Assembly: GCA_963924565.1 (NCBI GenBank)
Contig: OZ004613.1
Location: 24,800,001 to 24,864,000 of the forward strand
DNA length: 64,000 nucleotides
Direction of reading: 5' to 3'
Source: Ascidiella aspersa
Lineage: Eukaryota
The position numbers and the translations under genes were made by a program. Below are positions 8,390-57,000 of this stretch, one piece after another. How positions within the stretch are numbered: position 1 is the first letter of the stretch; each line of letters opens with the position of its first letter. Below the pieces are notes generated by a model, which saw only the letters and a list, made by a program, of their open reading frames with translations, did not search any database and was not told the DNA's origin.

Positions 8390-10150
8390 CCCTAACCTAA
8401 CACCCCCTCCCCATATCCCAAGCCCTAACCCTAAACCAACCCCTAATCAAACCCCGAGACTAATCCCCAACTTAACCCTAAAACAAGCCCCTAACCTAAC
8501 TTAACCTAAACCCTAACCCAACCTTTAACCCAACCCCTAACCCAACCCCTAACCCAACCCCTAACCCACCCCCTAACCCACCCCTAACCCACCCCCTAAC
8601 CCACCCCTAACCCACCCCCTAACCAAACCCTTTACCCAACCTATAATACAACCCCTAAACAAACTTCTAACCCACCCCTAACCAACCCTTCACCCAACCC
8701 ATAGTGCAACCCCTAACCCTCCCTCTAACCCACCCCTAATCCTAGTCTAAACCTAACCCATAATACAACCCCTAACCCAACTTTTAACCCACCCCTAATC
8801 CTAGTCTAAACCTAACCCATAATACAACCCCTAACCCTACTTGTAACCCACCCCTAATCCTAGTCTAAACCTAACCCATAATAGAACCCCCAAGCCCACT
8901 TGTAACCCACCCCTAATCCTAGTCTAAACCTAACCCATAATACAACCCCTAACCCACTTGTAACCCACCCCTAATCCTAGTCTAAACCTAACCCATAATA
9001 GAACCCCCAACCCCACTTGTAACCCACCCCTAATCCTAGTCTAAACCTAACCCATAATACAACCCCTAACCAACTTCTAACCCACCCCTAATCCTAGTCT
9101 AAACCTAACCCATAATAGAACCCCCAACCCCACTTGTAACCCACCCCTAATCCTAGTCTAAACCTAACCCATAATACAACCCCTAACCCCACTTGTAACC
9201 CACCCCTAATCCTAGACTAAACCTAACCCATAATACAACCCCTAACCCAACTTCTAACCCACCCCCAATCCTAGTCTAAACCTAACCCATAATACAACCC
9301 CTAACCCCACTTGTAACCCACCCATAATCCTAGTCTAAACCTAACCCATAATAGAACCCTTAACCCAACTTCTAACCCACACTTAACCCTAGTCTGAACG
9401 AACCCGTAATACAACTCCTAACCCCACTTGTAACCCACCCCTAATCCTAGTTATAACCTAACCCATTTTACAACCCCTAACCCAACTTCTAACCCACAAT
9501 TAATCCTAGTCTAAACGAACCCGTAATACAACCCCTAACCCCACTTCTATCTTACCCCTAATCCTAGTTTTAACCTGACCCATTTTGCAACCCCTAACCC
9601 AACTTCTAACCCACTATTAATAAAACCTAACCCATAACACAAATCCCTAACTTAATTTTACCCGTAATCTTTAACACAAACACAAACTATATTTTAACCT
9701 TAACCCTTAACACAAACCCTAAATAAATTTTAATCCGTAAAACAAACTCAATTTAATTTAAACCTAACCCACACTACAACCCCCAACCCAACTTCTGACC
9801 CACACTTAAAAAAACCTAACCCATAACACAAACCCCTAACTAAATGTTTACCTTGTAACCTTTAACATTAACCCTAACTAAATTTTACCTCTAACCCTTA
9901 ACACAAACCCTAAATAAATTTTAATTTTTAAAACACAAACCCTAATTAAATTTAATTTAATCCTCAACACAAACCCTAACAAAATTTAAACCTTGTAACC
10001 TTTAACACAAACCCTAACTAAATTTTAACCTTGTAACCTTTAACACAAAGCTTAACTAAATTTTAACCCTAACCTTTAACACATACTTTAAATCACTTTT
10101 TATGAACTTGAAACCCTAACAAATTTTTACCCCACAATATTTCAAACCCA
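8390..10150 (+). repeat. CCCTAA-rich minisatellite (~59-bp unit at ~8740-9600)
   Basis: Unit aatcctagtctaaacctaacccataatacaacccctaaccccacttgtaacccacccct. Confidence 0.9.
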
Positions 10151-10969
10151 ATCCAAATATAACCTCTAAAATTGACAATAAATTTCTGAGCTAAAGTCCA
10201 AGGTTTAGTGGTTGGTTTAGCAATTTGTATAGGGATGCTTATTGTTAATTAGCAAACCCAATGCCCAATTCAACCCATATATTTCAACCCTTATACCAGC
10301 CCACACTAAACAAAGTTCCCACATAACCACTAAACCATATCAAAATGTACTTCTAACTCGTCCCTCCACTTCGAGCACTTCCATGGATCCCTTGGGGTAC
10401 GTGGGCTAGTTTTAGGGCCCCAAGAAGGCCTACTCAATTTTTTAGGTTGTTCAATTTTTAAATGGACAATTTTATTTTAAAAAGAGTTTAATTAAAACAA
10501 ACGTTTTGGGCCTTCTCCTTATAATGTATTTAGACTTAATTTAGGTTTGACATTTGTTGGACTGAGCCTACACCCTTCGTTACCCCCCATAATTCCGGAC
10601 TAAGCTTTGGAAACCCCGAATGCCAACCCCAGTAGCACACAGTTTACCTTATCTCTCAAGTTAAAGTACGCCTTGAACCCACAGATATAGCAATCCATTT
10701 GAGGCTGGATCCCCTGAAGCTGGATGAAAGGTTGCGAACGAAAGGCAACGCTGCTATTTCTCTAATGATTAAGTCTGTTTATCAGCACTGTTACATTAGA
10801 AGGCACCTTTGTCTTTGTGTACTTCCGATTACAGGCCAAAAGTGAAGTCTTGTCGGGGTTGCCTTTCTTATTCCCGACACAGCCTGCAAACATAGTCAGA
10901 ATTACTAGCGTGTTTGCTAAAACATTTTTTGGGAATAATGATTTAAAATGTTCGACAAAATCGTTAACC

Positions 10970-10975
10970 TTTATT
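10970..10975 (-). promoter_or_regulatory. Candidate polyadenylation signal AATAAA for gene copy A
   Basis: Minus-strand AATAAA ~210 nt after the stop codon; also present in copy B near 50833. Confidence 0.4.
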
Positions 10976-11184
10976 GTGCATTGAAGTCGTGAAATTGTGC
11001 ATACGTTACTAGAGGAAACTTTTTGTTTGTTCAATATATGACACTTCCGTCAAGCCTTAGGGGCCCGCCCGCAATTGTGTTGTGTTGGCCTTGGCTTGTT
11101 TGTTTAATGAACGACATACACCCAGTACACTATACAGCATTGGCTGACATAATACTTTATCATACTTTTTGTAGTTTTTACCAT

Positions 11185-14100
11185 TTAGATAGTTCTGCGA
11201 GGCGAACAGCAGCCGAAGCAGCACACCATCTTTCGAAAGAATGAAAGCGTTCTTCTTATAGGTCCTTTCTGTAAAAAAGTTAACAAGTAAATAAACGATG
11301 CCTACCTTTTATAAACAAATAAGTATTACAAACTAAAAAATTTTAAATTACTCATATAAAAGGCAAATTATTTTTGAAATAACTCAAACATAAAACATAA
11401 CTAAATTCTCAGAACTTAAAATTATTAAATTTAAAAAAATAATTGAAGTCCCTAACAATTTTCAGTTACGACCCAACAAATTGCTTTATAACGTTAAGTC
11501 CCAAAACAAGAATACGTAAGAAGTGCTCGCTCGTAACTGGTGTGCAAATATGCAACTATATACATATGTAGAGGTACTATAATCGAAAAAATGTTAAAAC
11601 TTAGATTTATTTGAAAAACTAGACCTCTGCCTGGACAGCCAACGTAAGGTGTAAATTTGAAATGACCAATGTTGAACTACAATTATCTAATTTGAAAAAC
11701 GGAAATAAAAGCAATCAAACAATCGCTGCCTGAGATAACAAAACAATGCCAAATAAATAAAATACGCCTGGCGAAATTAGGCAAAACACAAATAAATAAA
11801 TCAATATGATACGAGTTAAACAGATTTCAAACGAACATAACGAAAGAACGTTTTCAAAAATAGTTTTTGACAGATTTCATATGTGCATACTTTATTCTTT
11901 CTGGTAGAGGAAAGTGTTTTCTCAAATTGAAAATATACCATAAAACCCTACTCTCCTATACAAAATGTTTCTTCGTTTACCCATGATTACTGTTTTTATA
12001 TGAAAGTCTTTATGGCATTTGAATATCACGGTAACACAAGCTTAAAAATACAGGATTATTGCGAATGAATTTTTAGTGTTATAAATGTATGGGTAAGTGG
12101 GTTATAGTATAGATAGAGTATACCTTTTGCTTTTTTTGTGTGCCGGAATCGGCTGCTGTGGAGTTGTCGACGTAGACCGTTGCCGCACTGGCTTCGTTTG
12201 AAGCGGCAACGGCCACAGAATGGTTGGCGGCTTGAATTGATGCCGCATTAATGAAGGGGCTGCTCGGCCTCGGTATTATGGCCTGTTGTAGAGCAGCCCC
12301 TACGGTGAATGTAGCCAAATCTTGAAGTTCTTCCTCAAACTGTTAAAAAAGCACGTTAAACCTTAGCGGGATACCTGTGTTGAACAGATGTCTCTTAACC
12401 TGTATGCTACATTAGATTTAGAAAGTCGTTTTAGCGTAGTTCAAGGTCGATGGTTGCAGATATAAAAGCATATCCATTAATAAGGTAACGAAATGTTCGA
12501 GATAACTTCAAAGTTACTTACTGCTTCCTCGTCTGTCTCGGAGCCTTGTGGCGTTTCCGTCCCACTCGATGTTGTTTGCTACAAAGTATAACACAACGTT
12601 AAACAGGACAAAATGAATTCGTCTAGCATCTATTTTGATAGTTGCATATATGAAAGCGTATTTATCAATAGAAACAAGAAATACGTAGGCTAAGAAGTGC
12701 TCGCTTGTAACTGGTGTGCAAATATGCAACTATATGTATATAGAGGTACTATAATCGAAAAAATGATAAATCTTAAATTTATTTGAAAAACTAAACCTCG
12801 TATAACCCGCCTGGACAGCCAACGTAAGGTGTAAATTTTAATTGACCCATGTTGGACTACAATTATCTAATTTGAAAAACGGAAATAAAGGCCTTTCCAA
12901 CGAAAAACGAACATAGTTAAAAAACGTTTTCAAAAATAGTGTTTGACAGATTTCATATGTGCATACTTTATTCTTTCTGGTAGAGGAAAGTGTTTTCTCA
13001 AATTGACAATATACCATAAAACCCTAGTCTCCTATACAAAATGTTTCTTCGTTTACCCTTGATTACTGTTTTTATATGAAAGTCTTTATGGCATTTGAAT
13101 ATCACGGTAACACAAGCGTAAAAATACAGGATTATTGCGAATGAATTTATAGTGTTATAAATGCATGGGTAAGTGGGTTATAGTATAGAGTATACTTTTT
13201 GCTTTTTTTGTGAGCCGGAATCGGCTGCTGCGGAGTTGTCGACGTAGACCGTTGCCGCACTGGCTTCGTTTGAAGCGGCAACGGCCACTGAATGGTTGGC
13301 GGCTTGAATTGATGCCGCATTAATGAAGGGGATGCTCGGCCTCGGTATTATGGCCTGTTGTAGAGCAGCCCCTACGGTGAATGTAGCCAAATCTTGAAGT
13401 TCTTCCTCAAACTGTTAAAAAAGCACGTTAAACCTTAGCGGGATACCTGTGTTGAACAGATGTCTCTTAACCTGTATGCTACATTAGATTTAGAAAGTCG
13501 TTTTAGCGTAGTTCAAGGTCGATGGTTGCAGACATGAAAGCATATCCATTAATAGGTAACGAAATGTTCGAGATAACTTCAAAGTTACTTACTGCTTCCT
13601 CGTCTGTCTCGGAGCCTAGTGGCGTTTCCGTCCCACTCGATGTTGTTTGCTACAAAGTACAACACAACGTTAAACAGGACAAAATAAATTCCTCTAGCAT
13701 CTATTTTTCAGGTTTGCATTTCTTTGAACATAAAATTGGATTGTCGTTTTAGTCACTGCGTCACGTGAGCCATCCATACATCTATCGTTTGTAGAATTTT
13801 GCCAGAGTATTTTTATTGGCCACAATACAAAGATATTTTTGTTGGGTATGAAAAATATAAAAGTAACCAAGAAATTCAAAATTTTAATATAAAAACATCG
13901 TCATCATATTAAGTTATCAATTTACATGAATTAAGACTTAAATCGTTAAATTAAAATATTTATGTCAAACCATAAAGTCTGCTATTGGAGTTGTTTTATG
14001 AGTAAAAATAGTTTTCTATGAATACTGTTGTATTTCGGTTTCATGTGTTTCACTGTGGGGTTGTTTATTTTTTGTTAAATTGAAGTGTACAACATTCATA

Positions 14101-17100
14101 GCATAACAACTAACAAAAAACTCCTTTCACTTAAAATTATACAAATTTTTTTTTTTTGTTTTATTATAGTTAGTGTAAATTTATCTTTCACTTGAGATGG
14201 CTTAATTGAAGTAGATGACTCTTAATCTGTGTGTCACATTATATTCAGAAAGTGGTTTTAGGACGGTTTAATGTCCTTGATTTTAAAACATCACTTAGTT
14301 TGTTCGAATTGGCTATAAAGCTTGTAGGCTGTCACTAATTTTTTTCGCTTTTTTCTTCTCAAGTTTGTAAGAGTCACACTTTAACCACATAGACATACTG
14401 TTTCACACTTTTTTATGAACCAACATTGTTTTGACCTGTGGTATTTGAGTGAGCTTTAAACCAAAATGTTTGAGAGGTACTGTTGTAGAAAGTAAGTTAC
14501 TGTTTGACGGTTGCATATATGAAAGCGTATTTATTAATAGAAAAATAAGTGTTCGAGAAAATTTTCAAGTTACTTACTGCCTCATCTACTTCAGAGCCTT
14601 CTGTCGTTTCATTGTTGGGCGGTATTGTTTGCTTCAAGGTATAGCACTATGTTAGACAGGACAAAATGACATTTGTCAATTTTCTGTAATTACTTTTTAG
14701 TTTCCGGTAGCGCAAACTGGTTTGCATTTCTTTGAGACATAAAATTAAATTGTCGTTTTAGTCACAGCGTCACATAAGTTACAAAGACATCTCACGATCT
14801 TTGTGGAATTTTGCCAGAGTATTTTTATTGGCGACAAGCTAAAGATATTTTTGTTGGGTACGAAAAATATAAAATCAACGAAAAAATTCAAAGTTTGATT
14901 ATAAAAACATTGTCATCCTAATTGATCAATTTGCATGAACTAAGACTAAAATCGTTGAATTTTATTTATATCAAACAATAAAGTCTGCTAATAAAGTTGT
15001 TTTATTGGTAAAAATATATTTCTATAAAGATTTTGGTGTTGTTTGTTTTTTTGGTAAATTCAAGTGTACAATATACATAGCATAGCAATTAACGCACGTT
15101 TATGGCATGTAATAACCAAAATATAAGATGAAGAAGAATTGGAATCCTTTTTTTTTTCTTCACTTAAATTTACACAAATTTTTTGATTGATAATATTAAG
15201 TGTAAATTTATATTTCAATTGAAATTGTTTGAGGCAAACCGAAATAAAGATTTTGAAAAATAGGCGTTTAAACGTTCTCGCATAAATATTTTTAAACCGG
15301 GTGGTTTAAGTGGGTCAAACCATAATAAAACGTAAATTTTGACATTGCTTTTTTTAGTACATTTAAAAATAAGTTAGAATAATGATTCAAAAAATCTTCG
15401 ACAAAAATATATTTCTTTCGTTTACCCATAATTACTGTTTTTATAAGAGGTTCTTTACGACATTTATATTTTAACAGCTCAGGGTAACATAAGCTTTACA
15501 ATAAACGACTATTGCTAATAATTTATGGTGTTTTAAAAGTATGGGTAATTAAGTTATAGTATAGAGTATACCTTCGGGTGCTGTGATGATGGTGCGCAAT
15601 GGTCGACGTCGACCGGCGCCTCTGCAATTTCTTCCAAAGCGGCAAAGGCCGCGGGGTGGTCGACGTCGACCGGCGCCGCCCTCATCTCATCCAAAGCGGC
15701 AACTGCCGCGGAGTTGTCGGCGGCTGCGACTGATGCCGCCTCATCATAGGGGCTGCTCGGCCTCTGTATTGTGCGGGCCTCGCACAAGGTAGCCCCTACA
15801 ATGAAGGCGGCCAACTGGTCGCATGCCGCTTCCAATTCTTCCTCATTCTGTTAAAAATGCACTTATTAAACCTTTGCGGGACATGTGTATAGAACAGGTG
15901 GCTCTTAACCTGTGTGCTACATTAGATTCAAGAAAATATAAAGATTTTCATAGTTAAAATTAGCTGTTATCAATTTACAACTGTCTAAAAACTGTGGTAT
16001 CAGTAAAAGCATTTGTGTTTTGCAATAAAAAACTCTCAGTTTGCAATAAAAAACCCTGACCCGGCGAATTCACAGATCAAATTTTAAGAAGCTCCGCTCT
16101 ATACACTGTTCGCGTGTTGCAATGCTTACTTTTATACCTGCCTCACACTTTAAAAGTATTTGTATGGTTAAGTTACTTTTACATCACAGAAATGTAGTAA
16201 ACGTCCTAGCCGGTAGCAACTATTAGTTAGGCTTGCCGATAGTTTACTCGGTTTGACATCGAAAAATAAGCCACGCTTATAGTTAGCTGTTAGTTGTGTT
16301 TGAACCATACTTTGTTATAAATGACAAAATGAATTCCTCTAGCATCTATTTCTGTTGCTACTTTTCAGTTACCGGAAGCCCAACCAGGTTTGCATTTCTT
16401 TGAACATAAAATTGGATTGTCGTTTTAGTCACTGCGTCACGTGAGCCATCCATACATCTATCGTTTGTGGAATTTTGCCAGAGTATTTTTATTGGCCACA
16501 ATACAAAGATATTTTTGTTGGGTATGAAAAATATAAAAGTAACTAAGAAATTCAAAATTTTAATATAAAAACATCGTCAACATATTAAGTTATCAATTTA
16601 CATGAATTAAGACTTAAATCGTTAAATTAAAATATTTATGACAAACCATAAAGTCTGCTATTGGAGTTGTTTTATGAGTAAAAATAGTTTTCTATGAATA
16701 CTATTGTATTTCGGTTTCATTTGTTTCACTGTGGGGTTGTTTATTTTTTGTTAAATTGAAGTGTACAACATTCATAGCATAGCAACTAAAAAAAATCTCC
16801 TTTCACTTAAAATGATTCAACAAATTTTTTTTCTGTTTTATTATATTTAGTGTAACTTTATCTTTCAATTGAGATGGCTTAATTGAAGCAGATGGCTCTT
16901 AATCTGTGTGTCACATTATATTCAGAAAGTGGTTTTAGGACGGTTTAATGTCCTTGACTTTAAAACAGCACTTAGTTTGTTCGAATTGGCTATAAGCTTG
17001 TAGGCTGTCACTAATTTTTTTCGCTTTTTTCTTCTCAGGTTTGTAAGAGCCACACTTTAACCACATAGACATACTGTTTCACACTTTATGCCCAACATTG

Positions 17101-20100
17101 TTTTGACCTGTGGTATTTGAGTGAGCTTTAAACCAAAATGTTTGAGAGGTACTGTTGTAGAAAGTTTGTTACTGTTTGATGGTTGCATATATGAAAGCGT
17201 ATTTATTAATAGAAAAATAAGTGTTCGAGAAAATTTTCAAGTTACTTACTGCCTCATCTTCTTCAGAGCCTTCCGTCGTTTCATTGTTGGGCGGGATTGT
17301 TTGCTACAAGGTATAGCACTATGTTAGACAGGCCAAAATGACATTTGTAGCATCAATTTTCTGTAATTACTTTTTAGTTTCCGGTAGCGCAAACTGGTTT
17401 GCATTTCTTTGAGACATAAAATCAAATTGTCGTTTTAGTCACAGCGTCGCATAAGTTACAAAGACATCTCACTGTCTTTGTGGAATTTTGCCAGAGTATT
17501 TTTATTGGCGACAAGCTAAAGATGTTTTTGTTGGGTACGAAAAATATAAAATCAACGAAAAAATTCAAAATTTGATTATAAAAACATTGTCATCCAAATT
17601 GATCAATTTGCATGAACTAAGACTAAAATCGTTAAATTTTATTTATATCAAACAATAAAGTCTGCTAATAAAGTTGTTTTATTGGTAAAAATATATTTCT
17701 ATAAAGATTTTGGTGTTGTTTGTTTTTTTGGTAAATTCAAGTGTACAATATACATAGCATAGCAATTAACACACGTTTATGGCATGTAATAACCAAAATA
17801 TAAGATGAAGAAGAATTGGAATCCTTTTTTTTTCTTCACTTAAATTTACACAAATTTTTTGATTTATAATATTAAGTGTAAATTTATATTTCAATTGAAA
17901 TTGTTTGAGGCAAACCGAAATAAAGATTTTGAAAAATAGGCGTTTAAACGTTCTCGCATAAATATTTTTAAACCGGGTGGTTTAAGTGGGTCAAACCATA
18001 ATAAAACATAATATTTGACATTGCGTTTTTTAGTACATTTAAAAATAAGTTAGAATAATGATTCAAAAAATCTTCGACAAAAATATATTTCTTTCGTTTA
18101 CCCATATATACTGTTTTTTATAAGAGGTTCTTTACGACATTTATATTTTAACAGCTATATATCAGGGTAACATAAGCTTTACAATAAACGACTATTGCTA
18201 ATAATTTATGGTGTTTTAAAAGTATGGGTAATTGAGTTATAGTATAGAGTATACCTTCGGGTGCTGTGATGATGGTGCGCAATGGTCGACGTCGACCGGC
18301 GCCTCTGCAATTTCTTCCAAAGCGGCAAAGGCCGCGGGGTGGTCGACGTCGACCGGCGCCGCCCTTATCTCATCCAAAGCGGCAACTGCCGCGGAGTTGT
18401 CGGCGGCTGCAACTGATGCCGCCTCATCATAGGGGCTGCTCGGCCTCTGTATTGTGCGGGCCTCGCACAAGGTAGCCCCTACAATGAAGGCGGCCAACTG
18501 GTCGCATGCCGCTTCCAATTCTTCCTCATTCTGTTAAAAATGCACTTATTAAACCTTTGCGGGACACGTGTATAGAAAGGTGGCTCTTAACCTGTGTGCT
18601 ACATTAGATTCAGAAGAAAATATAAGACTTTCATAGTTAAAATTAGCTGTTATCAATTCACAACTGTCTAAAAACTGTGGTATCAGTAAAAGCATTTGTG
18701 TTTTGCAATAAAAATCTCTCAGTTTGCAATAAAAAACCCTGAACCTGCGAATTCACAGATCAAATTTTAAGAAGCTCCGCCCTATACACTGTTCGCTTGT
18801 TACAATGCTTACTTTTATACCTGCCTCACACTTTAAAAGTATTGTGTATGGTAAAGTTACTTTTACATCACAGAAATGTAGTATACGTCCTAGCCGGTAG
18901 CAACTATTAGTTAGGCTTGCCGATAGTTTACTCGGTTTGACATCGAAAAATAAGCCATGCTTATAATTAGCTGTTAGTTGTGTTTGAACTATACTTTTTA
19001 CAACCAGGTTTTGATAACTTTTTTTAGCATTATCTGACATGGCTGTGTGTTAAAAATGTACTTTATTTGTGCCAGGGCTGTTGAGTCGTTTAAAAATGAA
19101 CCCCGCAGTCCACTCCCGAGTCCAGAGTCCCGCTAAAATATGCGATTATCATCAAGTTCCGAACCTGGATTCGACCCTAAAGTCCATATTCCACCCATTT
19201 ACGCATCTGAAATAAGAATGATATTGTCTAATCCACTCATATAATATAATTCATTCATAAAAAATTCATGGTTTGAAAATATTCGACCATAAATTAGTCT
19301 ATATCTTTACAGTCAACAGTTTGCGGCCTTATTAGTTTCAAAATTCGGCACGGCGCATGCGCACGTAAGACTCGGGACTCGCGTAAGACTCGGGACTCCA
19401 GCAAAATAATCCGACTCCGTCGAGTTCCGTTTTACCAGTCCAGAGTCGAACTCCGGCTTTTAACCCTGGTTTGTGCATGGGGTTGATCCAACTACTAACT
19501 TTAGGTTAATAAATGATTTAAAGTGTGAATCTCATTTACGTATACGTACAGTAAAACATGTTAACGAAAAGCAAACCCCAAAATATCGTTATTTTTATGA
19601 CGCTTTCCATATAGCCGCCATATAGTTGTTGGGACCCTTGGTATTACTCAAATATTTATAAAAGTTTTGTTCTTAATTTGTTAACGTTATGTAAACACTC
19701 TGCAGGTAAAGAAAAAATAAAACTTTAATCAAAAGGTAATATATGCTTGTTCCAGCAAAATTAACTACAATGCGTCGGACACAGTTTGCAATTTACGCAT
19801 ACCAAATACAACGGTAAAGTTCTACCAAGATAGCCTAATCAAACCAAATAAGCTATCTTTTTGCTTTCGAGGGGTACGTGGCGTACTGAGCACTGAGCAC
19901 AGATAAAAAATGTACATTGCTTGATATATTGACGTTTATTAAGTTGTGGGGCGCCTAGACTCAAAAGTTACGATTAAAATACGCAAAACTTCGTAAAAAA
20001 CCTTACAATGTTTTCAGTGTTAACAAACAGTCGGTATTTCATTCATATTTTAAAGACGGAATACTTTCGACCGAAAACATTTTCCGTGTTAGTATTTAAG

Positions 20101-23100
20101 ACAGGCTAAAATTCCAATTTCGCAGGTTCATGACTAGATTGCTTTCGCGGTATGTTGCCCAGATTTGCTCTAAACACTTCAATAGGGTAATATTAAAATT
20201 AGGATAGCAGCAATTTAAATACATTTGACCGAAAATGTTAATTCTCATTGTTGCAAGAATTATGAAAAATATATCTCAATATTGTAGCGTTAACTGCACT
20301 GTTATGATTAAGAATTAAACCTTACGTATTCTGGCCAGATATTCAAGGTTTCCATCTCAATGACGTCAAAGGTACCTTCTTGCATCTAAGGATGGATTGG
20401 CCGTATAAAAAACAAATATTTAGTTTTTGTAGTGAATATTAATTATATATATACTTGTTTTATTGAAACGGGAAAACTGTCCCTTTTTACTCATTTTTTG
20501 CACATGGGAACTAATTCCATGAAATTTCAAATTAAAACTAGTGCTGAAAAGTTGTTAGACATCAGATCGTATCTTATGTTTTATTGCACATTATTTAGTT
20601 TAGGCCATGATTGAATACATTGTTCTAACAGCGTGCCGCTACGTCGAGGATCACTGCGTATTTGTTTTTTTTATATTGTGGTCTTATTGATATGGTAAAA
20701 ACAATATTCTAATATACACATTTTGCACTGTTATAGTTACGAATGAAACCTTACGTGTTCTGGCCAGGTGTAGAACATCACTACATCAGCAGTTGAGCCT
20801 TCTTGCTTCTAAAAATGGAAGGCGACACAAAAATAACAAGAAATATTGATTGCAAGACTTAAAGTAAACAAAGAAGAAGCGACAGTTAAATTACTTAAGT
20901 TTTCTTCGTATTTCTTCGTATTGCTTCAATTTTGGTCAAATAAGGAAAAATCTTGCTAATAACTAATCGCATCAAATCTATAATCATATAGAACTACTTC
21001 AGTCGGCGACCCAACCAAATCAAACGGTGACCCAATTGTGGGTCGCGACCCATAGGTTGTGAAACAAACATTTGTGCATCGCATTGTTAAAAACTATTTT
21101 TACTGCGTGCTAACTACGCCGTAGACATCACCGCGCATTTGGCTTCTTTATGTTGTTATCTTATTAATATGATATTATCATTCCGATTTTAGATATGCTA
21201 TCTTTATAAGTAGGTAGCGGAACAGTGGCTTTAATCAGCAGGCGAGATTAGCTTTCATGGTTAACTTAATAACTTACCCCCTGCTGCTTCGAGTTTGCTG
21301 CGGACAGCGTTAACGGGGACCGCGCTCGTTGCTAGAAAGAAATACAAAACATTAGTAGGTACTACATCTTGTTTGTAACATATTAGGGTATACTTTTTAG
21401 TGTAAATTTGAATTGATTTTTCATTATTATATTTACAATTACCAAAAGGGCGTTATAAAATATATATAATTATATTTGACCTGTTATGGTAGTATTTTAA
21501 GCGCGGAAAATATCACACAACAAACAATATACCATTTATAATTTTATGAAACATGCTAAAAAATATTCAAAAAATAAAACTTTACAATAAACAAAATATA
21601 TAGTTATGTAAAGGTTAGCAAAATATACACAGAGCCAATATATAGTCCAAGCTTAAACTTTAATTTACAACAAAGAATTAGTTTGTTAGATCATTATTTC
21701 GGGCTTAGGATTTTAAACAAAACAACACGAATGTCTTTAATAGTAAAATGGACTCCAGCTATATGACATAAATTTGAATAACATCATCGTCAGGAAAAAG
21801 CATATTTCGGAATAACATTAAAATGGGACTAATGTGTAGAAATTCAAATAAGATCTAAATTATAACAAGACATGAATGACCAGAATGAGGTCTAACTAAC
21901 CTTTTATCTAGCCCCAAGCCCCACCCACAACCTTAAACCCTAAATATTTCAACTCCAAATTTAACTTGAACTTCACCAATTAACCCAGTGGTTCGCAACC
22001 TTTTTTGGCACACTAGAGAAATTATAAATAGTTCGCGGCACCCTTCCTAGTTTTTTTACTAAGTGGTTAACTGTAACGTTACAACAACGAGATTAATAGC
22101 AAACTTTTACTGTGCAACATGGTTGAAAAAACGTTTCTGATCTTTGGCACTTTTATCGTACACAAATAAAAAGTTGTATCAAAAATCTTACCAATAGAGC
22201 AATAACTGGAATACGAAATAATTTGAAACATCTAGCCCTAGTGGCACTCTTGGGCGTTAAAAATGGCCTAAAGTGCCACGGCCCCTGGTTAAGAACCAAT
22301 ACTGCATTAAGCCTAACAAGGGCAAACAAACAGCGGCGCAGTTTGATGTGTTTTATAGGCTATTTAGGTCGCATTTGGAGCAGTTTGGGACGTATTCCGT
22401 CTTCAATATAACAAATACGAATATTTAAGTATCAAGAATTTAAAAACAATGCGCGACTCATATTATTTAAGTATATTCAACTTGTGTGCAGTGGTTAAGT
22501 AAACCTGAACGATCTGTTTAAAAGATTTCATCTAAAAAAATTTAGTTGCATATTTGTGAACTGCATCGAACGATGTCTCCGGTTTAGGTTATACAGAAAA
22601 GCATGCAAGACTTGATGCCTACAACTTTTAAGGAATTAATGTTATTAAGGTGTTTGCCGTCACAAATAACTTTTCTAATTTCTAAGGCCAAAAAAGTTTG
22701 AGTGCCACTGGTTTTCATAACTAATATTGGCATAGAGATTAAGTTGGGATCAAGTCCTACTGTCCAGAAACAGTTTATGCGTATCAAACAAAATAGTTAA
22801 CATATATATTTGCTTTACTGAAATATAACCTAGCTAGCTCCTAGCTCCGCAGGCATTTATAACTTGTGCAGCCAGAAAGATAATCAAGAGACGAATGTAG
22901 TTTTAATTTAACAACATTCGTGTGTAGAGCCATTTTTTTACCAACCAAGTCTAGTTAAGTAATTGATGTGAATAATTTTTGTATAAAATCAATCGTAAAT
23001 TTAAAAGTCATGAGTTCCATATTTGTCTTTTTACACAAATATACCATATCAAAATGTCTTCTTTGGCTCTATGCATTGCATATATGTAATATTTACGTAT

Positions 23101-23593
23101 GTTTTAGCTCTATGAGGTAACAATGGCCGTTCATTAAAGTGCAAAAAAATAACTGATATTAAAAAAAGTGTTGCCAAAAAGTTACATTTAATGAGGTTTA
23201 CTAAAAGAAATACATAAAGTGGGACGATATTATAGCGTTTCACTTCTATTCTGCGATGAATTGAACCTTACTTGTTCTGGCGAAGTATACAACATAACTT
23301 CATCTAATTCCGAAGAGTCGGTTTGCACCTGAAAATGCATTGGTCATAAAATAAAACAACTCTTATATTATAATTAAAATTATTCCGTTCAGGGCAGGGT
23401 TTAAATCGTTATTTTTCGATAAGAAATACCTATAATACAGAGTTAAACAACATCGAGGTAAAGTAATTATTTCTATTTATCAAAATATGTCAGCGATATT
23501 TTTGTTTAGTAGCCTATTTTGTTCTTAAACCAAAAAATGTTAAGAAAATTGGTAATATGGTCATTTGTTAGAGCTTACCTTGGATCGTTGCAT
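11185..23593 (-). CDS. Multi-exon gene, copy A (~509 aa): acidic Ala-rich repeat protein with 4 AKAP-like helices and a C-terminal Cys-cluster anchor
   Basis: Manual GT-AG assembly, every exon a multiple of 3 with no internal stops: 23593-23579 MQRSK; 23328-23272 VQTDSSELDEVMLYTSPEQ; 21331-21278 QRARSPLTLSAANSKQQG; 20808-20755 KQEGSTADVVMFYTWPEH; 20385-20326 MQEGTFDVIEMETLNIWPEY; 18530-18255 NEEELEAACDQLAAFIVGATLCEAR...HPK; 17303-17250 QTIPPNNETTEGSEEDEA; 15847-15572; 14631-14578; 13649-13593 QTTSSGTETPLGSETDEEA; 13411-13196 FEEELQDLATFTVGAALQQA...QKKQK; 12578-12522; 12339-12124; 11268-11185 KGPIRRTLSFFRKMVCCFGCCSPRRTI*. Small exons could be missed. Confidence 0.8.
19073..19468. mobile_element. 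hAT MITE in a gene intron (also ~58438-58851)
   Basis: CAGGG...CCCTG termini; TSD ATTTGTGC/GTTTGTGC; internal GACTC repeats. Confidence 0.75.
21986..22304. mobile_element. hAT MITE in a gene intron (also 61390-61708)
   Basis: CAGTGGTTCGCAACC left TIR, degenerate right TIR; TSD AATTAACC/CATTAACC in copy B. Confidence 0.7.
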
Positions 23594-36463: not shown

Positions 36464-38050
36464 CAATAAAACATAAGTTACGATTTGATGTCAAATTTTT
36501 CGTAAGCACGACTTTAAATTTGAAATATCAAGGAATAAGTTACCATATTTGTTCGAAAACAGAGTAAAATGGAACTGCTGTCCAGTTCCAATGAAAAAAG
36601 TGAATGATCAATATCCATTACAAAAACTAAATATTTGTTGTTTTTTATTAGGCCATACCATTTTTAGATGCAAGAAGGCTCATACGACTTAAATGATGAT
36701 ACAATCTCGTATACCTGGTCAGAACACGTAAGGTTCATTTTGTAACTTTAATAATGCAAGTAACGCTATTTTATTGGGATGTTTATTTACCATAATAATA
36801 AAATAAATATAAAGATACCAAATATGCAGTGATATTTTCAACGGAATCGGCATACAGTAAAAAAAAACAATGTATTGAATCATGCCTTAAACGAAATATT
36901 GTGCAATAAAACATTAGTTATAATTTCATGTCTAACAATGTTTTGTAAGCAAGGCTTTTAAATTGAAATATCAAGGAATAAAAAATGTGCGCAACAGAGT
37001 AAAAAGACTGCTTTGTCGTTCCAATAAAACAATAGAATATAATTGATATTCACTACAAAAATCTAAATATTTGTTGCGCTTTCATACGGCCATACATTTT
37101 TAGATGCAAGAAGGCTCATACAACTTAAATGATGATACAATTTTGCATACCTGGCAAAAATTCGTATAAGGTTTAATTCGTAACTTTAAAAGTGCAGTTA
37201 ACGCTATAATATTGGGACACTTTTATGTTTTATTTGCTTTGTAAAATTCTTGTAACTATATGAGAATTTATATAACCGTTGAAATATATTTAATTTAACT
37301 TATAACGGACTTTCGGTCATGTCTGCGAGACTGTGACCCATACCGTAATGGTAATGTTACCCTTTGTGTATCTAATGTGAAACACAGGTAAAGATGCGCC
37401 TGTCGACGTCCGGCCATTCCCAGCAGCCGATTCAGCATCACCGCAGCAGCCAAAGGTAAACTCTATACTATAACCACCTTACCCATACATTTATAACAAT
37501 ATAAATTTATTAGAAATATTCGTCTGTTGAGGCGGCATCCGTTCCTGCCGACCATTCCGCGGCCATTGCCGCCTCGGAAGAAATTGGTGTGGCGCCGGTC
37601 GACGTCGGCCATTCCGCAGCCATTGCCGTCTTGAGCGAAGTCTGTGAGGAGCCGGTGGACGTCGGCCATTCCGCAGCAGCCGATTCAGGCACACAAAAAC
37701 ACCAAAGTTCGTCTATTGAGGCGGCATCCGCTCCTGCCGACTATTCCGCGACCATTGCCGCCTGTGAGGAAAGTGATGTGGCGCCGGTCGACGTCGGCCA
37801 TTCCACTGCCCTTGCCGCCTCTAAAGAAATTGGTGCGGCGCCTCTCAACGCCGTCCATTCCGCGACCGTTCCGTCGATGCACGACCTAAACTTTTGTCTG
37901 TCTGCGACAATTTGGACGCCTTCATCGTTGGGGCTGCATAAGCATTACTAAAGCCCGAAAAATAAATATGTCAAGCTGCCATTTCGATGCGTACCTGTTT
38001 CTGTCGGACAATCCGCGGCCGCCGATCAAGGCACAGCGAAGCAGAACAAC
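34123..38050 (+). pseudogene. Inverted, diverged paralog of the same gene, probably degenerate
   Basis: Four 60-nt AG/GT-bounded exons (34123-34182 and 36220-36279 MQEGSYDPNEDTISHSWPEH; 36668-36727; 37104-37163) homologous to the MQEG..WPEY exon. APVDV repeat segments at 37388-37455 (68 nt, out of phase) and from 37514. The helix remnant CDNLDAFIVGAA* (37903-37941) is frameshifted and stopped. No terminal exon found. Confidence 0.65.
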
Positions 38051-51047: not shown

Positions 51048-54000
51048 TTAGATAGTTCTGCGAGGCGAACAGCAGCCGAAGCAGCACACCATCTTTCGAA
51101 AGAATGAAAGCGTTCTTCTTATAGGCCCTTTCTGTAAAAAAGTTAACAAGTAAATAAACGATGCCTACCTTTTATAAACAAATAAGTATTACAAACTAAT
51201 AATTTTTAAATTACTCATATAAAAGGCAAATTATTTTTAAAATAACTCAAACATAAAACATAACTAAATTCTCAGAACTTAAAATTATTAAAATTAAAAA
51301 AAATAATTGAAGTCCCTAACAATTTTCAGTTACGACCCAACAAATTGCTTTATAACGTTAAGTCCCAAAACAAGAATACGTAAGAAGTGCTCGCTCGTAA
51401 CTGGTGTGCAAATATGCAACTATATATATATATATAGAGGTACTACAATCGAAAAAATGTTAAAACTTAGATTTATTTGAAAAACTAGACCTCTGCCTGG
51501 ACAGCCAACGTAAGGTGTAAATTTGAAATGACCCATGTTGGACTACAATTATCTAATTTGAAAAACGGAAATAAAAGCAATCAAACAATCGCTGCCTGAG
51601 ATAACAAAACAATGCCAAATAAATAAAATACGCCTGGCGAAATTAGGCAAAACACAAATAAATAAATCAATATGAACGAGTAAAACAGATTTCAAACGAA
51701 CATAACGAAAGAACGTTTTCAAAAATAATTTTGACAGAGTATTGCATATGTCCGTACTTTAATCTTTCTGGTAGAGGAAAGTGTTTTCTCAAATTGACAA
51801 TATACCATAAAACCCTACTCTCCTATCAAAATATTTCTTCGTTTACCCATGATTACTGTTTTTATATGAAAGTCTTTATGGCACTTGAATATCACGGTAA
51901 CATTGCGAATGAATTTATAGTGTTATAAATGCATGGGTAAGTGGGTTATAGTATAGAGTATACCTTTTGCTTTTTTTGTGTGCCGGAATCGGCTGCTGCG
52001 GAGTTGTCGACGTAGACCGCTGCCGCACTGGCTTCGTTTGAAGCGGCAACGGCCACAGAATGGTTGGCGGCTTGAATTGATGCCGCATTAATGAAGGGGC
52101 TGCTCGGCCTCGGTATTATGGCCTGTTGTAGAGCAGCCCCTACGGTGAATGTAGCCAAATCTTGAAGTTCTTCCTCAAACTGTTAAAAAAGCACGTTAAA
52201 CCTTAGCGGGATACCTGTGTTGAACAGATGTCTCTTAACCTGTATGCTACATTAGATTTAGAAAGTCGTTTTAGCGTAGTTCAAGGTCGATGGTTGCAGA
52301 TATAAAAGCATATCCATTAATAGGTAACGAAATGTTCGAGATAACTTCAAAGTTACTTACTGCTTCCTCGTCTGTCTCGGAGCCTTGTGGAGTTTCCGTC
52401 CCACTCGATGTTGTTTGCTACAAAGTATAACACAACGTTAAACAGGACAAAATGAATTCGTCTAGCATCTATTTTGATGGTTGCATATATGAAAGCGTAT
52501 TTATCAATAGAAACAAGAAATACGTAGGCTAAGAAGTGCTCGCTCGTAACTGGTGTGCAAATATGCAACTATATGTATATAGAGGTACTATAATCGAAAA
52601 AATGATGAAACTTGAATTTATTTGAAAAACTAAACCTCGTATAACCCGCCTGGACAGCCAACGTAAGGTGTAAATTTTAATTGACCCATGTTGGACTACA
52701 ATTATCTAATTTGAAAAACGGAAATAAAGGCCTTTCCAACGAAAAACGAACATAGTTAAAAAACGTTTTCAAAAATAGTTTTTGACAGATTTCATATGTG
52801 CATACTTTATTCTTTCTGGTAGAGGAAAGTGTTTTCTCAAATTGACAATATACCATAAAACCCTAGTCTCTTATACAAAATGTTTCTTCGTTTACCCTTG
52901 ATTACTGTTTTTATATGAAAGTCTTTATGGCACTTGAATATCACGGTAACACAAGCGTAAAAATACAGGATTATTGCGAATGAATTTATAGTGTTATAAA
53001 TGCATGGGTAAGTGGGTTATAGTATAGAGTATACCTTTTGCTTTTTTTGTGAGCCGGAATCGGCTGCTGCGGAGTTGTCGACGTAGACCGTTGCCGCACT
53101 GGCTTCGTTTGAAGCGGCAACGGCCACTGAATGGTTGGCGGCTTGAATTGATGCCGCATTAATGAAGGGGCTGCTCGGCCTCGGTATTATGGCCTGTTGT
53201 AGAGCAGCCCCTACGGTTAATGTAGCCAAATCTTGAAGTTCTTCCTCAAACTGTTAAAAAAGCACGTTAAACCTTAGCGGGATACCTGTGTTGAACAGAT
53301 GTCTCTTAACCTGTATGCTACATTAGATTTAGAAAGTCGTTTTAGCGTAGTTCAAGGTCGATGGTTGCAGATATAAAAGCATATCCATTAGTAGGTAACG
53401 AAATGTTCGAGATAACTTCAAAGTTACTTACTGCCTCCTCGTCTGTCTCGGAGCCTTGTGGCGTTTCCGTCCCACGCGATATTGTTTGCTACAAAGTATA
53501 ACACAACGTTAAACAGGACAAAATGAATTCGTCTAGCATCTATTTTGATGGTTGCATATATGAAAGCGTATTTATCAATACAAACAAGAAATACGTAGGC
53601 TAAGAAGTGCTCGCTCGTAACTGGTGTACAAATATGCAACTATATGTATATAGAGGTACTATAATCGAAAAAATGATGAAACTTAAATTTATTTGAAAAA
53701 CTAAACCTCGTATAACCCGCCTGGACAGCCAACGTAAGGTGTAAATTTTAATTGACCCATGTTGGACTACAATTATCTAATTTGAAAAACGGAAATAAAG
53801 GCCTTTCCAACGAAAAACGAACATAGCTAAAAAACGTTTTCAAAAATAGTTTTTGACAGATTTCATATGTGCATACTTTATTCTTTCTGGTAGAGGAAAG
53901 TGTTTTCTCAAATTGACAATATATCATAAAACCCTAGTCTCCTATACAAAATGTTTCTTCGTTTACCCTTGATTACTGTTTTTATATGAAAGTCTTTATG

Positions 54001-57000
54001 GCATTTGAATATCACGGTAACACAAGCGTAAAAATACAGGATTATTGCGAATGAATTTATAGTGTTATAAATGCATGGGTAAGTGGGTTATAGTATAGAG
54101 TATACCTTTTGCTTTTTTTGTGAGCCGGAAGCGGCTGCTGCGGAGTTGTCGACGTAGACCGTTGCCGCACTGGCTTCGTTTGAAGCGGCAACGGCCACTG
54201 AATGGTTGGCGGCTTGAATTGATGCCGCATTAATGAAGGGGCTGCTCGGCCTCGGTATTATGGCCTGTTGTAGAGCATCCCCTACGATGAATGTAGCCAA
54301 ATCTTGAAGTTCTTTCTCAAGCTGTTAAAAAAGCATGTTAAACCTTAGCGGGATACCTGTGTTGAACAGATGTCTCTTAACCTGTATGCTACATTAGATT
54401 TAGAAAGTCGTTTTAGCGTAGTTCAATGTCGATGGTTGCAGACATGAAAGCATATCCATTAATAGGTAACGAAATGTTCGAGATAACTTCAAAGTTACTT
54501 ACTGCTTCCTCGTCTGTCTCGGAGCCTAGTGGCGTATCCGTCCCAGGCGATATTGTTTGCTACAAAGTATAACACAACGTTAAACAGGACAAAATAAATT
54601 CCTCTAGCATCTATTTTTCAGGTTTGCATTTCTTTGAACATAAAATTGGATTGTCGTTTTAGTCACTGCGTCACGTGAGCCATCCATACATCTATCGTTT
54701 GTAGAATTTTGCCAGAGTATTTTTATTGGCCACAATACAAAGATATTTTTGTTGGGTATGAAAAATATAAAAGTAACTAAGAAATTCAAAATTTTAATAT
54801 AAAAACATCGACATCAAATTAAGTTATCAATTTACATGAATTAAGACTTAAATCGTTAAATTAAAATATTTATGTCAAACCATAAAGTCTGCTATTGGAG
54901 TTGTTTTATGAGTAAAACTAGTTTTCTATGAACACTGTTGTATTTCGGTTTCATTTGTTTCACTGTGGGGTTGTTTATTTTTTGTTAAATTGAAGTGTAC
55001 AACATTCATAGCATAGCAACTAAAAAAAAACTCCTTTCACTTAAAATTATACAAATTTTTTTTTTCTGTTTTATTATAGTTAGTGTAAATTTATCTTTCA
55101 TTTGAGATGGCTTAATTGAAGTAGATGGCTCTTAATCTGTGTGTCACATTATATTCAGAAAGTGGTTTTAGGACGGTTTACTGTCCTTGATATTAAAACA
55201 TCACTTAGTTTGTTCGAATTGGCTATAAAGCTTGTAGGCTGTCACTAATTTTTTTCGCTTTTTTCTTCTCAAGTTTGTAAGAGTCACACTTTAACCACAT
55301 AGACATACTGTTTCACACTTTTTTATGAACCAACATTGTTTTGACCTGTGGTATTTGAGTGAGCTTTAAACCAAAATGTTTGAGAGGTACTGTTGTAGAA
55401 AGTAAGTTACTGTTTGACGGTTGCATATATGAAAGCGTATTTATTAATAGAAAAATAAGTGTTCGAGAAAATTTTCAAGTTACTTACTGCCTCATCTTCT
55501 TCGGAGCCTTCTGTCGTTTCATTGTTGGGCAGGATTGTTTGCTACAAGGTAAAGCACTATGTTAGACAGGACAAAATGACATTTGTAGCATCAATATTCT
55601 GTAATTACTTTTTAGTTTCCGGTAGCGCAAACTGGTTTGCATTTCTTTAAGATATAATATTAAATTGTCGTTTTAGTCACAGCGTCACATAAGTTACAAG
55701 AAATCTCACTATCTTTGTGGAATTTTGCCCGAGTATTTTTATTGGCGACAATATAAAGACATTTTTGTTGGGTACGAAAAATATAAAATCAACGAAAAAA
55801 TTAAAAATTTGATTGTAAAAACATTGTCATCTTAATTGATCAATTTACATGAACTAAGACTAAAATCGTTGAATTTTATTTATATCAAACAATAAAGTCT
55901 GCTAATAAAGTTGTTTTATTGGTAAAAATAAATTTCTATGAAGATTGTGGTGTTGTTTGTTTTTTTGGTAAATTCAAGTGTACAATATACATAGCATAGC
56001 AATTAACGCGTTTATGGCATGTAATAACCAAAATATAAGATTAAGAAGATTTGGAATGCTTTTTTTTTCTTCATTTAAATTTACACAAAATTTTTGATTT
56101 ATAATATTAAGTGTAAATTTATATTTCAATTGAAATTGTTTGAGGCAAACCGAAAAAGATTTTGACAAATGGGCGTTTAAACGTTCTCGCATAAATATTT
56201 TTAAACCGGGTGGTTTAAGTGGGTCAAACCATAATAAAACATAAATTTTGACATTGCTTTTCTTAGTACATTTAAAAATAAGTTAGAATAATGAATAAAA
56301 AAATCTTCGACAAAAATATTTTTTTTTCGTTTACCCATAATTACTGTTTTTTGATAAGAGTTTCTTTACGGCATTTATATTTTAACAGCTATATATCAGG
56401 GTAACACAAGCTTTACAATAAACGAATATTGCTAATAATTTATGGTGTTTTAAAAGTATGGGTAATTGAGTTATAGTATAGAGTATACCTTCGGGTGCTG
56501 TGATGATGGTGAGCAATGGTCGACGTCGACCGGCGCCTCAGCAATTTCTTCCAAAGCGGCAAAGGCCGCGGGGTGGTCGACGTCGACCGGCGCCGCCCTC
56601 ATCTCATCCAAAGCGGCAACTGCCGCGGAGTTGTCGGCGGCTGCAACTGATGCCGCCTCATCATAGGGGCTGCTCGGCCTCGGTATTGTGCGGGCCTCGC
56701 ACAAGGTAGCCCCTACAATGAATGCGGCCAACTGGTCGCATGCCGCTTCCAATTCTTCCTCATTCTGTTAAAAATGCACTTGTTAGACCTTTCCCGGCAC
56801 ATGTGTCGTGTATACAACAGATGGCTCTTAACCTGTGTGTCACATTATATTTAGAAAGTCGTTTTAGGGTAGTATATTACAATTTACCCATACTTTGTTC
56901 TACAAAATATTTCTTTGCTACTTTTACAAATAACTTACTGTTTTTATTTTGAAGTATTTAAGGCACTTATATTTCAACAGCTATATCAGGGTAACAAAAT

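What the first reader, a model, noticed from the sequence alone, without database searches (positions are those of the whole stretch)
12124..18530. Candidate multivalent AKAP: tandem exons each starting with a PKA-R docking-like helix
Seen: each large repeat exon opens with EEELEAACDQLAAFIVGATLCEA or EEELQDLATFTVGAALQQA (LEKELQDLATFIVGDALQQA at 54321), followed by a disordered Ala/acidic linker. Established: AKAP helices follow A-x-x-[IL][VA]-x-x-[AIV][ILV]-x-x-A, as in AKAP-IS QIEYLAKQIVDNAIQQA and RIAD LEQYANQLADQIIKEA. The two exon types resemble these two peptides. Inference: a scaffold carrying 4-6 sites for D/D-domain proteins (PKA RI/RII or ropporin/DPY30-type).
Basis: partly seen in the sequence, partly recalled or inferred. 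Interest (0 to 1): 0.75.

Follow-up and report, generated by a model that had tools for sequence, protein, structure and literature searches.

The report
Repeated hydrophobic-helix exons in sea-squirt gene
A real, transcribed gene of a young sea-squirt gene family strings four to six copies of one conserved helix along a floppy acidic protein, but the helix lacks the two-faced character of a protein kinase A anchor, so that reading stays unproven.

Summary
On the minus strand, 4 of 4 large exons in 12124-18530, and 6 of 6 in the second gene copy at 51964-57944, open with the quoted helix motifs. All 14 modelled exons are whole-codon, phase 0. RNA reads from run X4 lie in one orientation, consistent with a minus-strand RNA. 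They show GT..AG junctions at 12124|11268 and 13196|12578, and loose ends join exon B to the small exon b and to an upstream exon.

The motif xxELxxACDxLAAFIVGAALxEA is the conserved core of a family found only in this genome plus one unnamed protein. pN/pS is 0.28 in the core against 0.80 and 0.90 in the flanks. AlphaFold gives one confident helix, residues 2-26 at pLDDT about 95, then low-confidence chain.

The AKAP reading is not established:
- No Pfam hit.
- The degenerate consensus also matches 8-62% of shuffles.
- The helix is not amphipathic in 0 of 20 variants.
- Conservation goes all round the helix.

Best reading: a membrane-tethered acidic scaffold with multivalent docking helices whose partner is unknown; a D/D domain is one candidate. 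Earlier scan notes on other DNA of this genome give other AKAP-like readings, but not for this family.

The parts
18255..18530 (-). Large exon type B (276 nt, phase 0): 25-residue helix, then RPSSPYDEAAS, then an Ala/Asp/His-rich tail with two PVDVDH sub-repeats
   Evidence: acceptor aacag, donor gtatac; near-identical to 15847-15572
17250..17303 (-). Small acidic exon b (54 nt): QTIPPNNETTEGSEEDEA
   Evidence: The loose end of 8 RNA reads leaving exon B ends exactly at this exon's 5' edge (3 mismatches here, 1 mismatch at the copy-2 exon 55541)
15572..15847 (-). Large exon type B (276 nt)
   Evidence: RNA depth 5.1-5.6. Loose ends at both edges: 15572 (8 reads, to exon b) and 15847 (3 reads, to an exon like 20326-20385). 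AlphaFold helix at residues 2-26, pLDDT about 95
14578..14631 (-). Small acidic exon b (54 nt)
   Evidence: splice sites predicted, no joint listed
13593..13649 (-). Small acidic exon a (57 nt): QTTSSGTETPLGSETDEEA
   Evidence: splice sites predicted, no joint listed
13196..13411 (-). Large exon type A (216 nt): helix ELQDLATFTVGAALQQA plus Ala/Ser tail
   Evidence: RNA joint 13196|12578 in 5 reads at 5 starts. The call lists it as 12579->13197 because the reads carry C at 13196
12522..12578 (-). Small acidic exon a (57 nt)
   Evidence: its 5' edge is fixed by the RNA joint
12124..12339 (-). Large exon type A (216 nt)
   Evidence: RNA depth 16 in bin 12085-12281. Joint 12124|11268 in 8 reads at 7 starts, with ends CT..AC on the + strand
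11182..11268 (-). Last coding exon: KGPIRRTLSFFRKMVCCFGCCSPRRTI, stop at 11187-11185. It is a basic tail (+7) with an R-x-x-S site and a CCFGCC cluster
   Evidence: Conserved in 5 gene copies and, more loosely, in an array on contig C2
10884..11181 (-). Intron in the 3' UTR, starting 3 nt after the stop codon
   Evidence: 14 RNA reads have a loose end at 11181 whose letters lie at 10853-10882. GT..AG was read
20326..20385 (-). Upstream small exon u4 (60 nt): MQEGTFDVIEMETLNIWPEY
   Evidence: Three reads join a 2-mismatch variant of it to the start of exon B
20755..20808 (-). Upstream small exon u3 (54 nt), predicted
   Evidence: no RNA laid there
21278..21331 (-). Upstream small exon u2 (54 nt), predicted
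23272..23328 (-). Upstream small exon u1 (57 nt), predicted
23579..23593 (-). Putative start-codon exon MQRSK, predicted only
   Evidence: similar copies at 29785-29811 and 62996-63022
51964..57944 (-). Same part of the second gene copy. Three B exons (57944-57669, 57354-57079, 56764-56489), exon b (55541-55488), three A exons (54321-54106, 53250-53035, 52179-51964) and exon a (52417-52361)
37519..37940 (+). Degenerate inverted paralogue: 189-nt tail repeats (PVDVGH...) ending in a helix motif cut by a stop (LSVCDNLDAFIVGAA*)

Best explanation
This is an expressed protein-coding gene of a recently amplified family known so far only from this sea-squirt genome. Copy 1 runs on the minus strand from about 23593 to 10850 and copy 2 lies about 39.4 kb further on. 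If all 14 phase-0 exons are used, the product is about 509 residues long and strongly acidic (net -55). It is predicted to be mostly disordered. It carries four (copy 1) or six (copy 2) copies of a 25-residue helix. The helix core, LAAFIVGAAL, is the only part of the repeat under clear purifying selection. Each helix is followed by a conserved RPSSPFDEAAS stretch and a variable Ala/Asp/His spacer. The protein ends in a basic tail with an R-x-x-S site and a CCFGCC cluster. I infer a stickers-and-spacers scaffold. The Cys cluster and basic tail would hold it on a membrane, by palmitoylation, which is inferred and not shown. The repeated helices would act as multivalent docking sites that bury most of their circumference in a hydrophobic groove or helical bundle of a partner, or of each other. 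Shown here: the exons, splicing at the 3' half, the strand, the conservation pattern and the predicted helix. Inferred: the membrane anchoring, the docking role and the identity of the partner. A D/D domain of a PKA R subunit or an RIIa-type protein is one candidate, not the default.
For: Gene model: all exons are multiples of 3 with AG/GT sites. RNA: 134 reads laid from about 6% of run X4, almost all with the first mate on the + strand. Canonical joints 12124|11268 (8 reads) and 13196|12578 (5 reads). Loose ends B->b (8 reads), u4-like->B (3 reads) and the 3' UTR intron (14 reads). Family: 42 six-frame matches in the genome, 11 of them B exons at 93-100% identity, which means five near-identical gene copies plus diverged paralogues at C7 24.797, 24.447 and 21.239 Mb and C2 28.50 Mb. 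Conserved core: V invariant, L, F, A and L at 90% or more, in 20 variants. pN/pS is 0.28 in core codons 8-17 against 0.80 and 0.90 in the flanks. AlphaFold: helix 2-26 with pLDDT block means 94, 95 and 75, the rest 55 or below, pTM 0.29. A paralogous exon with two motifs gives two separate helices, pTM 0.31. Conservation covers all faces of the helix, which fits a buried docking element. The tail exon is conserved and has charge +7 against -55 overall.
Against: No partner, binding or membrane association has been shown. No homologue of known function was found. Only the 3' half of the model has RNA junction support. No joint was listed for a->A, b->a or any exon upstream of B. Some intronic bins have depth like the exons, for example 15237-15433 at 5.0. 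Reads come from several near-identical copies and cannot be assigned to one. The pN/pS values rest on 190 non-independent pairs of 23 codons. Several paralogues look degenerate, with stops or frameshifts, so part of the family is decaying.
Confidence: 0.45

Rival explanations
1. Multivalent A-kinase anchoring protein. Each helix docks the D/D dimer of a PKA RI or RII subunit, or an RIIa/DPY-30-type protein, so that four to six holoenzymes are clustered at a membrane next to the R-x-x-S site in the tail.
For: In the family consensus the residues at the paired positions (AC, LA, IV, AL, A) are small aliphatics spaced four apart. This is the arrangement described for AKAP helices (PMC12083921 section 5 and PMC3682517 Results, passages read). 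17 of 20 family variants fit the recalled RII-binding pattern. The helix is confidently predicted and is followed by disordered chain. The flanks are acidic. The genome has at least three RIIa-domain exons above the Pfam cut-off. Two-helix AKAPs (SKIP, AKAP220) are on record (PMC12083921 Discussion). A lipid anchor and a basophilic kinase site in the tail would fit.
Against: The window's own main exon types B and A do not fit the pattern, because each has Thr at one core position. The pattern matches 8-62% of composition-preserving shuffles, so a fit carries little weight. Phe and Gly on the face that would point away from a D/D groove are among the best-conserved residues, and the conservation moment is 0.09 with permutation p 0.31. 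AKAP polar faces, by contrast, are reported as poorly conserved (PMC12083921). There is no Pfam RII_binding_1 hit (low power). R-R-T-L-S is R-x-x-S, not the optimal R-R-x-S (from general knowledge).
Confidence: 0.2
2. Membrane-dipping or self-associating hydrophobic helices. The contiguous 10-residue block LAAFIVGAAL, with its small-xxx-small spacing, inserts shallowly into a bilayer or packs helix against helix. This would drive clustering or condensation of the protein rather than recruit a separate partner.
For: It is conserved all round. The tail suggests membrane proximity. The tandem copies resemble stickers in an acidic spacer.
Against: AlphaFold does not pack the two helices of a paralogous exon into a confident fold (pTM 0.31). 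The block is too short to span a bilayer, and its strongly acidic flanks would be repelled by anionic membranes (inference). There is no direct test.
Confidence: 0.2
3. A young, transcribed but functionless or decaying orphan family, possibly a selfish amplified array. The motif looks conserved only because the copies are recent or homogenised by gene conversion.
For: The family is absent from protein collections except for one 109-residue open frame. Copies differ in exon number. Several paralogues carry stops or frameshifts. Telomere-like minisatellites and fold-backs flank each copy.
Against: Among paralogues diverged to pS about 0.4, the core keeps pN/pS 0.28 while the flanks are near 0.8-0.9. 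All 11 B exons are open. Splice sites and phase are kept in all modelled exons. The RNA is spliced canonically.
Confidence: 0.12

Closest known systems
AKAP anchoring helices
   Same: A helix of about 18-25 residues with small aliphatic residues in pairs spaced four apart (LA, IV, AL, A). It has acidic flanks and sits in an otherwise disordered scaffold.
   Different: It is not amphipathic. Conservation includes the would-be exposed face, with Phe and Gly. The window's two main exon types have Thr at a core position. There is no Pfam match. Binding is untested.
SKIP and AKAP220, AKAPs with two anchoring helices (PMC12083921, Discussion passage)
   Same: More than one candidate docking helix in one polypeptide.
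   Different: Here there are four to six near-identical helices made by tandem exon duplication, in a family with no detectable relation to either protein.
Lipid-anchored small AKAPs (smAKAP in PMC12083921; AKAP18alpha recalled, not checked by a call)
   Same: A short disordered protein with a candidate docking helix and a likely acylation site.
   Different: Those proteins are N-terminally myristoylated or palmitoylated and have one helix. Here the Cys cluster is C-terminal and follows a basic stretch, and acylation is only inferred.
Stickers-and-spacers disordered scaffolds with tandem short linear motifs (general class, from general knowledge)
   Same: A conserved short motif under selection is embedded in fast-evolving low-complexity spacers, and copy number varies between paralogues.
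   Different: No partner or condensate behaviour is known for this family.

Membership tests
AKAP (functional class) | [quoted passage not shown] | tested here: met
   AlphaFold helix at residues 2-26 of exon B with pLDDT about 95. The same helix is predicted in a paralogous exon.
AKAP (functional class) | The helix is amphipathic: one hydrophobic face and one polar face | tested here: not met
The hydrophobic moment is 0.08-0.23 (Eisenberg scale) and is not above shuffles. 0 of 20 variants beat 95% of their shuffles on the Kyte-Doolittle or Fauchere-Pliska scales.
AKAP (functional class) | Conserved small aliphatic side chains in pairs on the binding face | tested here: inconclusive
   The family consensus has LA/IV/AL/A, and 17 of 20 variants fit the recalled pattern. 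The window's B and A types carry Thr at one position, and 8-62% of shuffles also fit.
AKAP (functional class) | Less conservation on the face that does not contact the D/D domain (PMC12083921 section 5) | tested here: not met
   The conservation moment is 0.09 with permutation p 0.31. Phe (19 of 20) and Gly (17 of 20) lie on the other face.
AKAP (functional class) | Binds the D/D domain of a PKA R subunit and is displaced by an anchoring-disruptor peptide | not testable with these tools
   No multimer prediction or bench assay is available. RIIa-domain exons do exist in the genome.
Pfam RII_binding_1 (PF10522) | Match to the family HMM | tested here: inconclusive
   0 families at E<=10 for four exon translations. 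0 matches in the six-frame genome, but the control genomes were silent too and the model has only 19 positions.
Any known protein family or solved structure | Sequence or fold similarity | tested here: not met
   Pfam gave none. Of 1.84 billion representatives there was 1 hit, an unnamed 109-residue open frame. The profile search gave none. The PDB profile search gave only chance-level hits at E 0.09 and 1.1. Foldseek against PDB gave 0 matches. The ESM Atlas gave no usable hit.

The most novel reading that the evidence does not exclude
A four- to six-valent anchoring protein, tethered to a membrane by a C-terminal Cys cluster, for PKA R subunits or other D/D-domain (RIIa/DPY-30-type) proteins. 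It would be built by tandem exon duplication and encoded by a gene family that has recently amplified in one sea-squirt lineage. The array could therefore be a fast-evolving, RNAi-policed signalling scaffold, for example in gametes.
Probability: 0.15. Interest if true: 0.7.

Novelty: new variant of a known kind. Interest (0 to 1): 0.4.

Why it matters
If the helices do dock D/D domains, this would be the most multivalent AKAP described. It would also be an example of anchoring valency being tuned by exon copy number between near-identical paralogues. If they dock something else, the family is still a clean natural case of a short helix motif under selection inside freely evolving spacers, in a locally amplified, expressed orphan gene. 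The practical lesson for the scan is that an AKAP-like residue pattern in Ala-rich sequence is weak evidence by itself. Here 8-62% of shuffles match it.

Tried and rejected
Pfam scan of four exon translations at E<=10 gave nothing. A six-frame search of the whole genome with PF10522 gave nothing, and its controls were silent too.

phmmer of exon B against 1.84 billion representatives gave one unnamed 109-residue open frame, 63% identical, which reads through into intron-like sequence. A profile search with alignment A2 gave no hit at E<=0.01, and did not return that same protein either. The ESM Atlas gave no usable hit.

A PDB profile search with the 23-column motif gave two chance-level hits, a fatty-acid oxidation subunit and a TetR regulator, and no AKAP peptide. 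Foldseek of the exon-B model against PDB gave 0 matches.

I considered and rejected a compact helical-bundle domain per exon. pTM is 0.29 and 0.31, only the first helix is confident, and the tails are not conserved. I considered BH3, LIR, FFAT, WH2 and NES-type motifs by eye; none fits the register, and this was not tested by a call.

I looked for the published RII-binding consensus pattern in three papers and in one full-text search and did not find it. The pattern used is therefore recalled. A search for ascidian AKAP literature listed 12 of 22 papers, and none describes this family (listing and abstract starts only).

Rows dropped: of the 26 motif variants, alignment A1 used 20. Three were dropped for a stop inside the motif, and three for being near-duplicates of the window's types. 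The Leu-for-Phe exon at 53250 was not caught by the regular expression.

The joined spliced protein was never built, searched or folded. All searches were run exon by exon, and only summed residue counts. Figure S2 of PMC12083921, which aligns AKAP helices, could bear on whether Phe or Gly occur at these positions in natural AKAPs.


Full report
WHAT IS THERE

The window is AT-rich eukaryotic DNA. Earlier notes of this scan call the genome a sea squirt; I did not verify that. The window holds two copies of a block about 39.4 kb long, at 97-99% identity. In the region of the finding the coding strand is the minus strand.

Four large exons lie at 18530-18255 and 15847-15572 (type B, 276 nt) and at 13411-13196 and 12339-12124 (type A, 216 nt). 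Each follows a ttttaacag acceptor and precedes a gtatac donor. Each is a whole number of codons.

Between the large exons lie small acidic exons of 54 nt (b: 17303-17250, 14631-14578) and 57 nt (a: 13649-13593, 12578-12522). The last coding exon starts at 11268 and reads KGPIRRTLSFFRKMVCCFGCCSPRRTI before the stop. Upstream are four small exons at 20385-20326, 20808-20755, 21331-21278 and 23328-23272, and a possible start exon MQRSK at 23593-23579. These are predicted from splice sites only.

All 14 exons are phase 0. Their lengths sum to 509 codons, with 17.5% Ala and net charge -55. The last exon alone has charge +7.

The second gene copy has three B exons 590 bp apart and three A exons, giving six helices against four in copy 1.

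IS IT EXPRESSED

One RNA-seq run of the same species label (X4, raw reads, about 6% of the run read) gave 134 reads on 11100-17000. Nearly all had the first mate on the + strand, consistent with a minus-strand RNA in the usual stranded library.

Two joints passed the tool's threshold:
- 12124|11268: 8 reads at 7 starts, CT..AC on the + strand, which is GT..AG on the minus strand.
- 13196|12578: 5 reads at 5 starts. The call lists it one base off because the reads carry C at 13196.

Loose ends add further support:
- 8 reads run from the 3' edge of exon B (15572) into letters that end exactly at the 5' edge of exon b (best match 55512-55541, 1 mismatch).
- 3 reads run from the 5' edge of exon B (15847) into a 2-mismatch variant of exon 20385-20326.
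- 14 reads cross a 3' UTR intron, 11181-10884, that starts 3 nt after the stop codon.

Points against a tidy picture:
- No joint was listed for a->A or b->a.
- Nothing upstream of exon B was laid.
- Some intronic bins have depth like the exons; 15237-15433 has 5.0.
- The reads clearly come from several near-identical gene copies.

HOW WIDE IS THE FAMILY

A six-frame search of the whole assembly with exon B gave 42 matches. Eleven are B exons at 93-100% identity. They define five near-identical gene copies: two in the window, and three on the + strand at C7 24.374, 24.403 and 24.431 Mb.

More diverged units lie at C7 24.797 Mb (just outside the window), 24.447 Mb and 21.239 Mb, at window 37.5 kb, and at C2 28.50 Mb. 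The tail exon is present in the five copies. On C2 it forms an array of eight looser copies, five of them without internal stops.

Outside this genome, a search of 1.84 billion representative proteins gave one hit. It is an unnamed 109-residue open frame, 63% identical, that runs on into intron-like sequence. A profile search found nothing. Pfam, the ESM Atlas, a PDB sequence profile and Foldseek also gave nothing usable.

WHAT IS CONSERVED

Twenty variants of the motif were aligned. Six of the 26 found were dropped: three with a stop inside the motif and three near-duplicates. The consensus is LxxACDxLAAFIVGAALxEAxxI. Val is invariant, and L, F, A and L are at 90% or more.

Aligning whole units extends the conserved stretch to ...IxRPSSPFDEAAS. 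After that the units diverge into Ala/Asp/His-rich spacers with a looser PVDV[DG]H-SAAxAAL sub-repeat.

Nei-Gojobori counts over all 190 pairs give pN/pS 0.28 for the ten core codons. The seven codons before give 0.80 and the six after give 0.90. The pairs are not independent and the stretch is short, but the contrast points to the hydrophobic decapeptide as the selected element.

STRUCTURE

AlphaFold2 on exon B with 18 aligned units predicts one helix at residues 2-26. The pLDDT block means are 94, 95 and 75, everything after is 55 or below, and pTM is 0.29. A paralogous exon that carries two motifs gives two separate helices (2-26 and 55-84) with pTM 0.31. The picture is helices on a flexible string, not a folded repeat domain.

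IS IT AN AKAP

If the motif is written in pairs spaced four apart, the family consensus has AC, LA, IV, AL, A. These are small aliphatics, as the literature describes for AKAP helices (PMC12083921 section 5 and PMC3682517 Results, passages read).

Four tests weaken the inference:
1. The recalled degenerate RII-binding pattern fits 17 of 20 family variants but not the window's own B and A types, each of which has Thr at one core position. It also fits 8-62% of composition-preserving shuffles of the units, so a fit means little in Ala-rich sequence.
2. The helix is not amphipathic. Its hydrophobic moment is 0.08-0.23 and no higher than in shuffles. 0 of 20 variants beat 95% of shuffles on either of two further scales. 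I took those peptides from the finding; no tool verified them.
3. Conservation is not one-sided (moment 0.09, permutation p 0.31). The near-invariant Phe and Gly would sit on the face pointing away from a D/D groove, whereas AKAP polar faces are reported as poorly conserved.
4. Pfam RII_binding_1 hits neither the exons nor anything in the six-frame genome. That search was also silent in its controls, so it has little power.

Nothing excludes D/D binding. The putative contact residues are intact in most paralogues, and the genome has RIIa-domain exons. But the defining property, binding, cannot be tested here, and two defining sequence features were tested and not met. I therefore do not file this as an AKAP.

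MOST LIKELY MECHANISM

I read the product as a membrane-tethered, acidic, disordered scaffold. The tether would be the basic tail plus the CCFGCC cluster, with palmitoylation inferred. Its four to six identical hydrophobic helices would be multivalent docking elements buried on most sides by their partner. The RPSSPF stretch after each helix and the R-x-x-S in the tail are possible phospho-switches; this comes from general knowledge and is untested. The partner is unknown.

My rough odds are:
- generic docking scaffold: about 0.45
- D/D-domain anchor: about 0.2
- self-associating or membrane-dipping helices: about 0.2
- functionless young family: about 0.12

These overlap, because the AKAP case is a special case of the first.

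NOVELTY AND VERDICT

The gene family appears undescribed. No named relative was found in any collection searched. A full-text search for ascidian AKAPs listed nothing like it (listing only). It is a new variant of a known kind of protein: a tandem short-motif scaffold.

Interest is moderate.

Noticed in passing
window 1-24000 and 39400-64000: The whole gene with its downstream flank is present twice, about 39.4 kb apart, at 97-99% identity. The copies differ in exon number: two B exons 2.68 kb apart in one copy against three B exons 590 bp apart in the other, and two against three A exons. Three more copies lie 0.4 Mb away on the other strand.
   Followed up: partly
window 4600-5850, 8530-9615, 9817-10120 and 44150-45450, 48050-49525, 49728-49957: There are C-rich telomere-like (CCCTAA-derived) minisatellites with periods of 59, 110-114 and 37-38 nt downstream of each gene copy. 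They cause the strong GC skew in those bins.
   Followed up: no
window 10884-11181: The gene has a spliced 3' UTR. An intron starts 3 nt after the stop codon (14 RNA reads), and the transcript continues toward the fold-back region that earlier notes read as a hairpin RNA. This is RNA evidence at the gene's 3' end, which the earlier follow-up said it could not obtain.
   Followed up: partly
window 20326-20385, 20755-20808, 23272-23328: Three upstream small exons share a second short motif ending in an aromatic or Thr residue, x, Pro, Glu and then Gln, His or Tyr: ...VMLYTSPEQ, ...VMFYTWPEH, ...LNIWPEY. Its function is unknown.
   Followed up: no
window 37519-37940 (+) and L034 4684-5789 (-): A paralogue type is made of 189-nt tandem repeats that encode only the PVDVGH/SAAIA tail motif. 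It ends in a helix motif cut short by a stop (…DAFIVGAA*) and looks degenerate.
   Followed up: partly
L033 1-3200 (G000:C2:28498001-28501200): An array of eight copies of the Cys-cluster tail exon, including three of those that the genome search placed just before L033. Several copies have in-frame TGA stops. The array lies upstream of three helix-motif units on the same strand. It may be gene fragments or a differently ordered paralogue.
   Followed up: partly
window 29785-29811 (-): A third copy of the putative start-codon exon (2 mismatches) lies between the two gene copies, away from any helix exon.
   Followed up: no
window 12873-13069 and 15237-15433: These intronic stretches have RNA depth similar to the exons. 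At 13026 there is a 5-read loose end that leads elsewhere. This may be a transcribed repeat or an unannotated exon.
   Followed up: no
window 24107-24374: A run of 268 N (gap or masked stretch) lies just upstream of the putative first exon. It was left untouched, so the true 5' end of copy 1 cannot be read.
   Followed up: no
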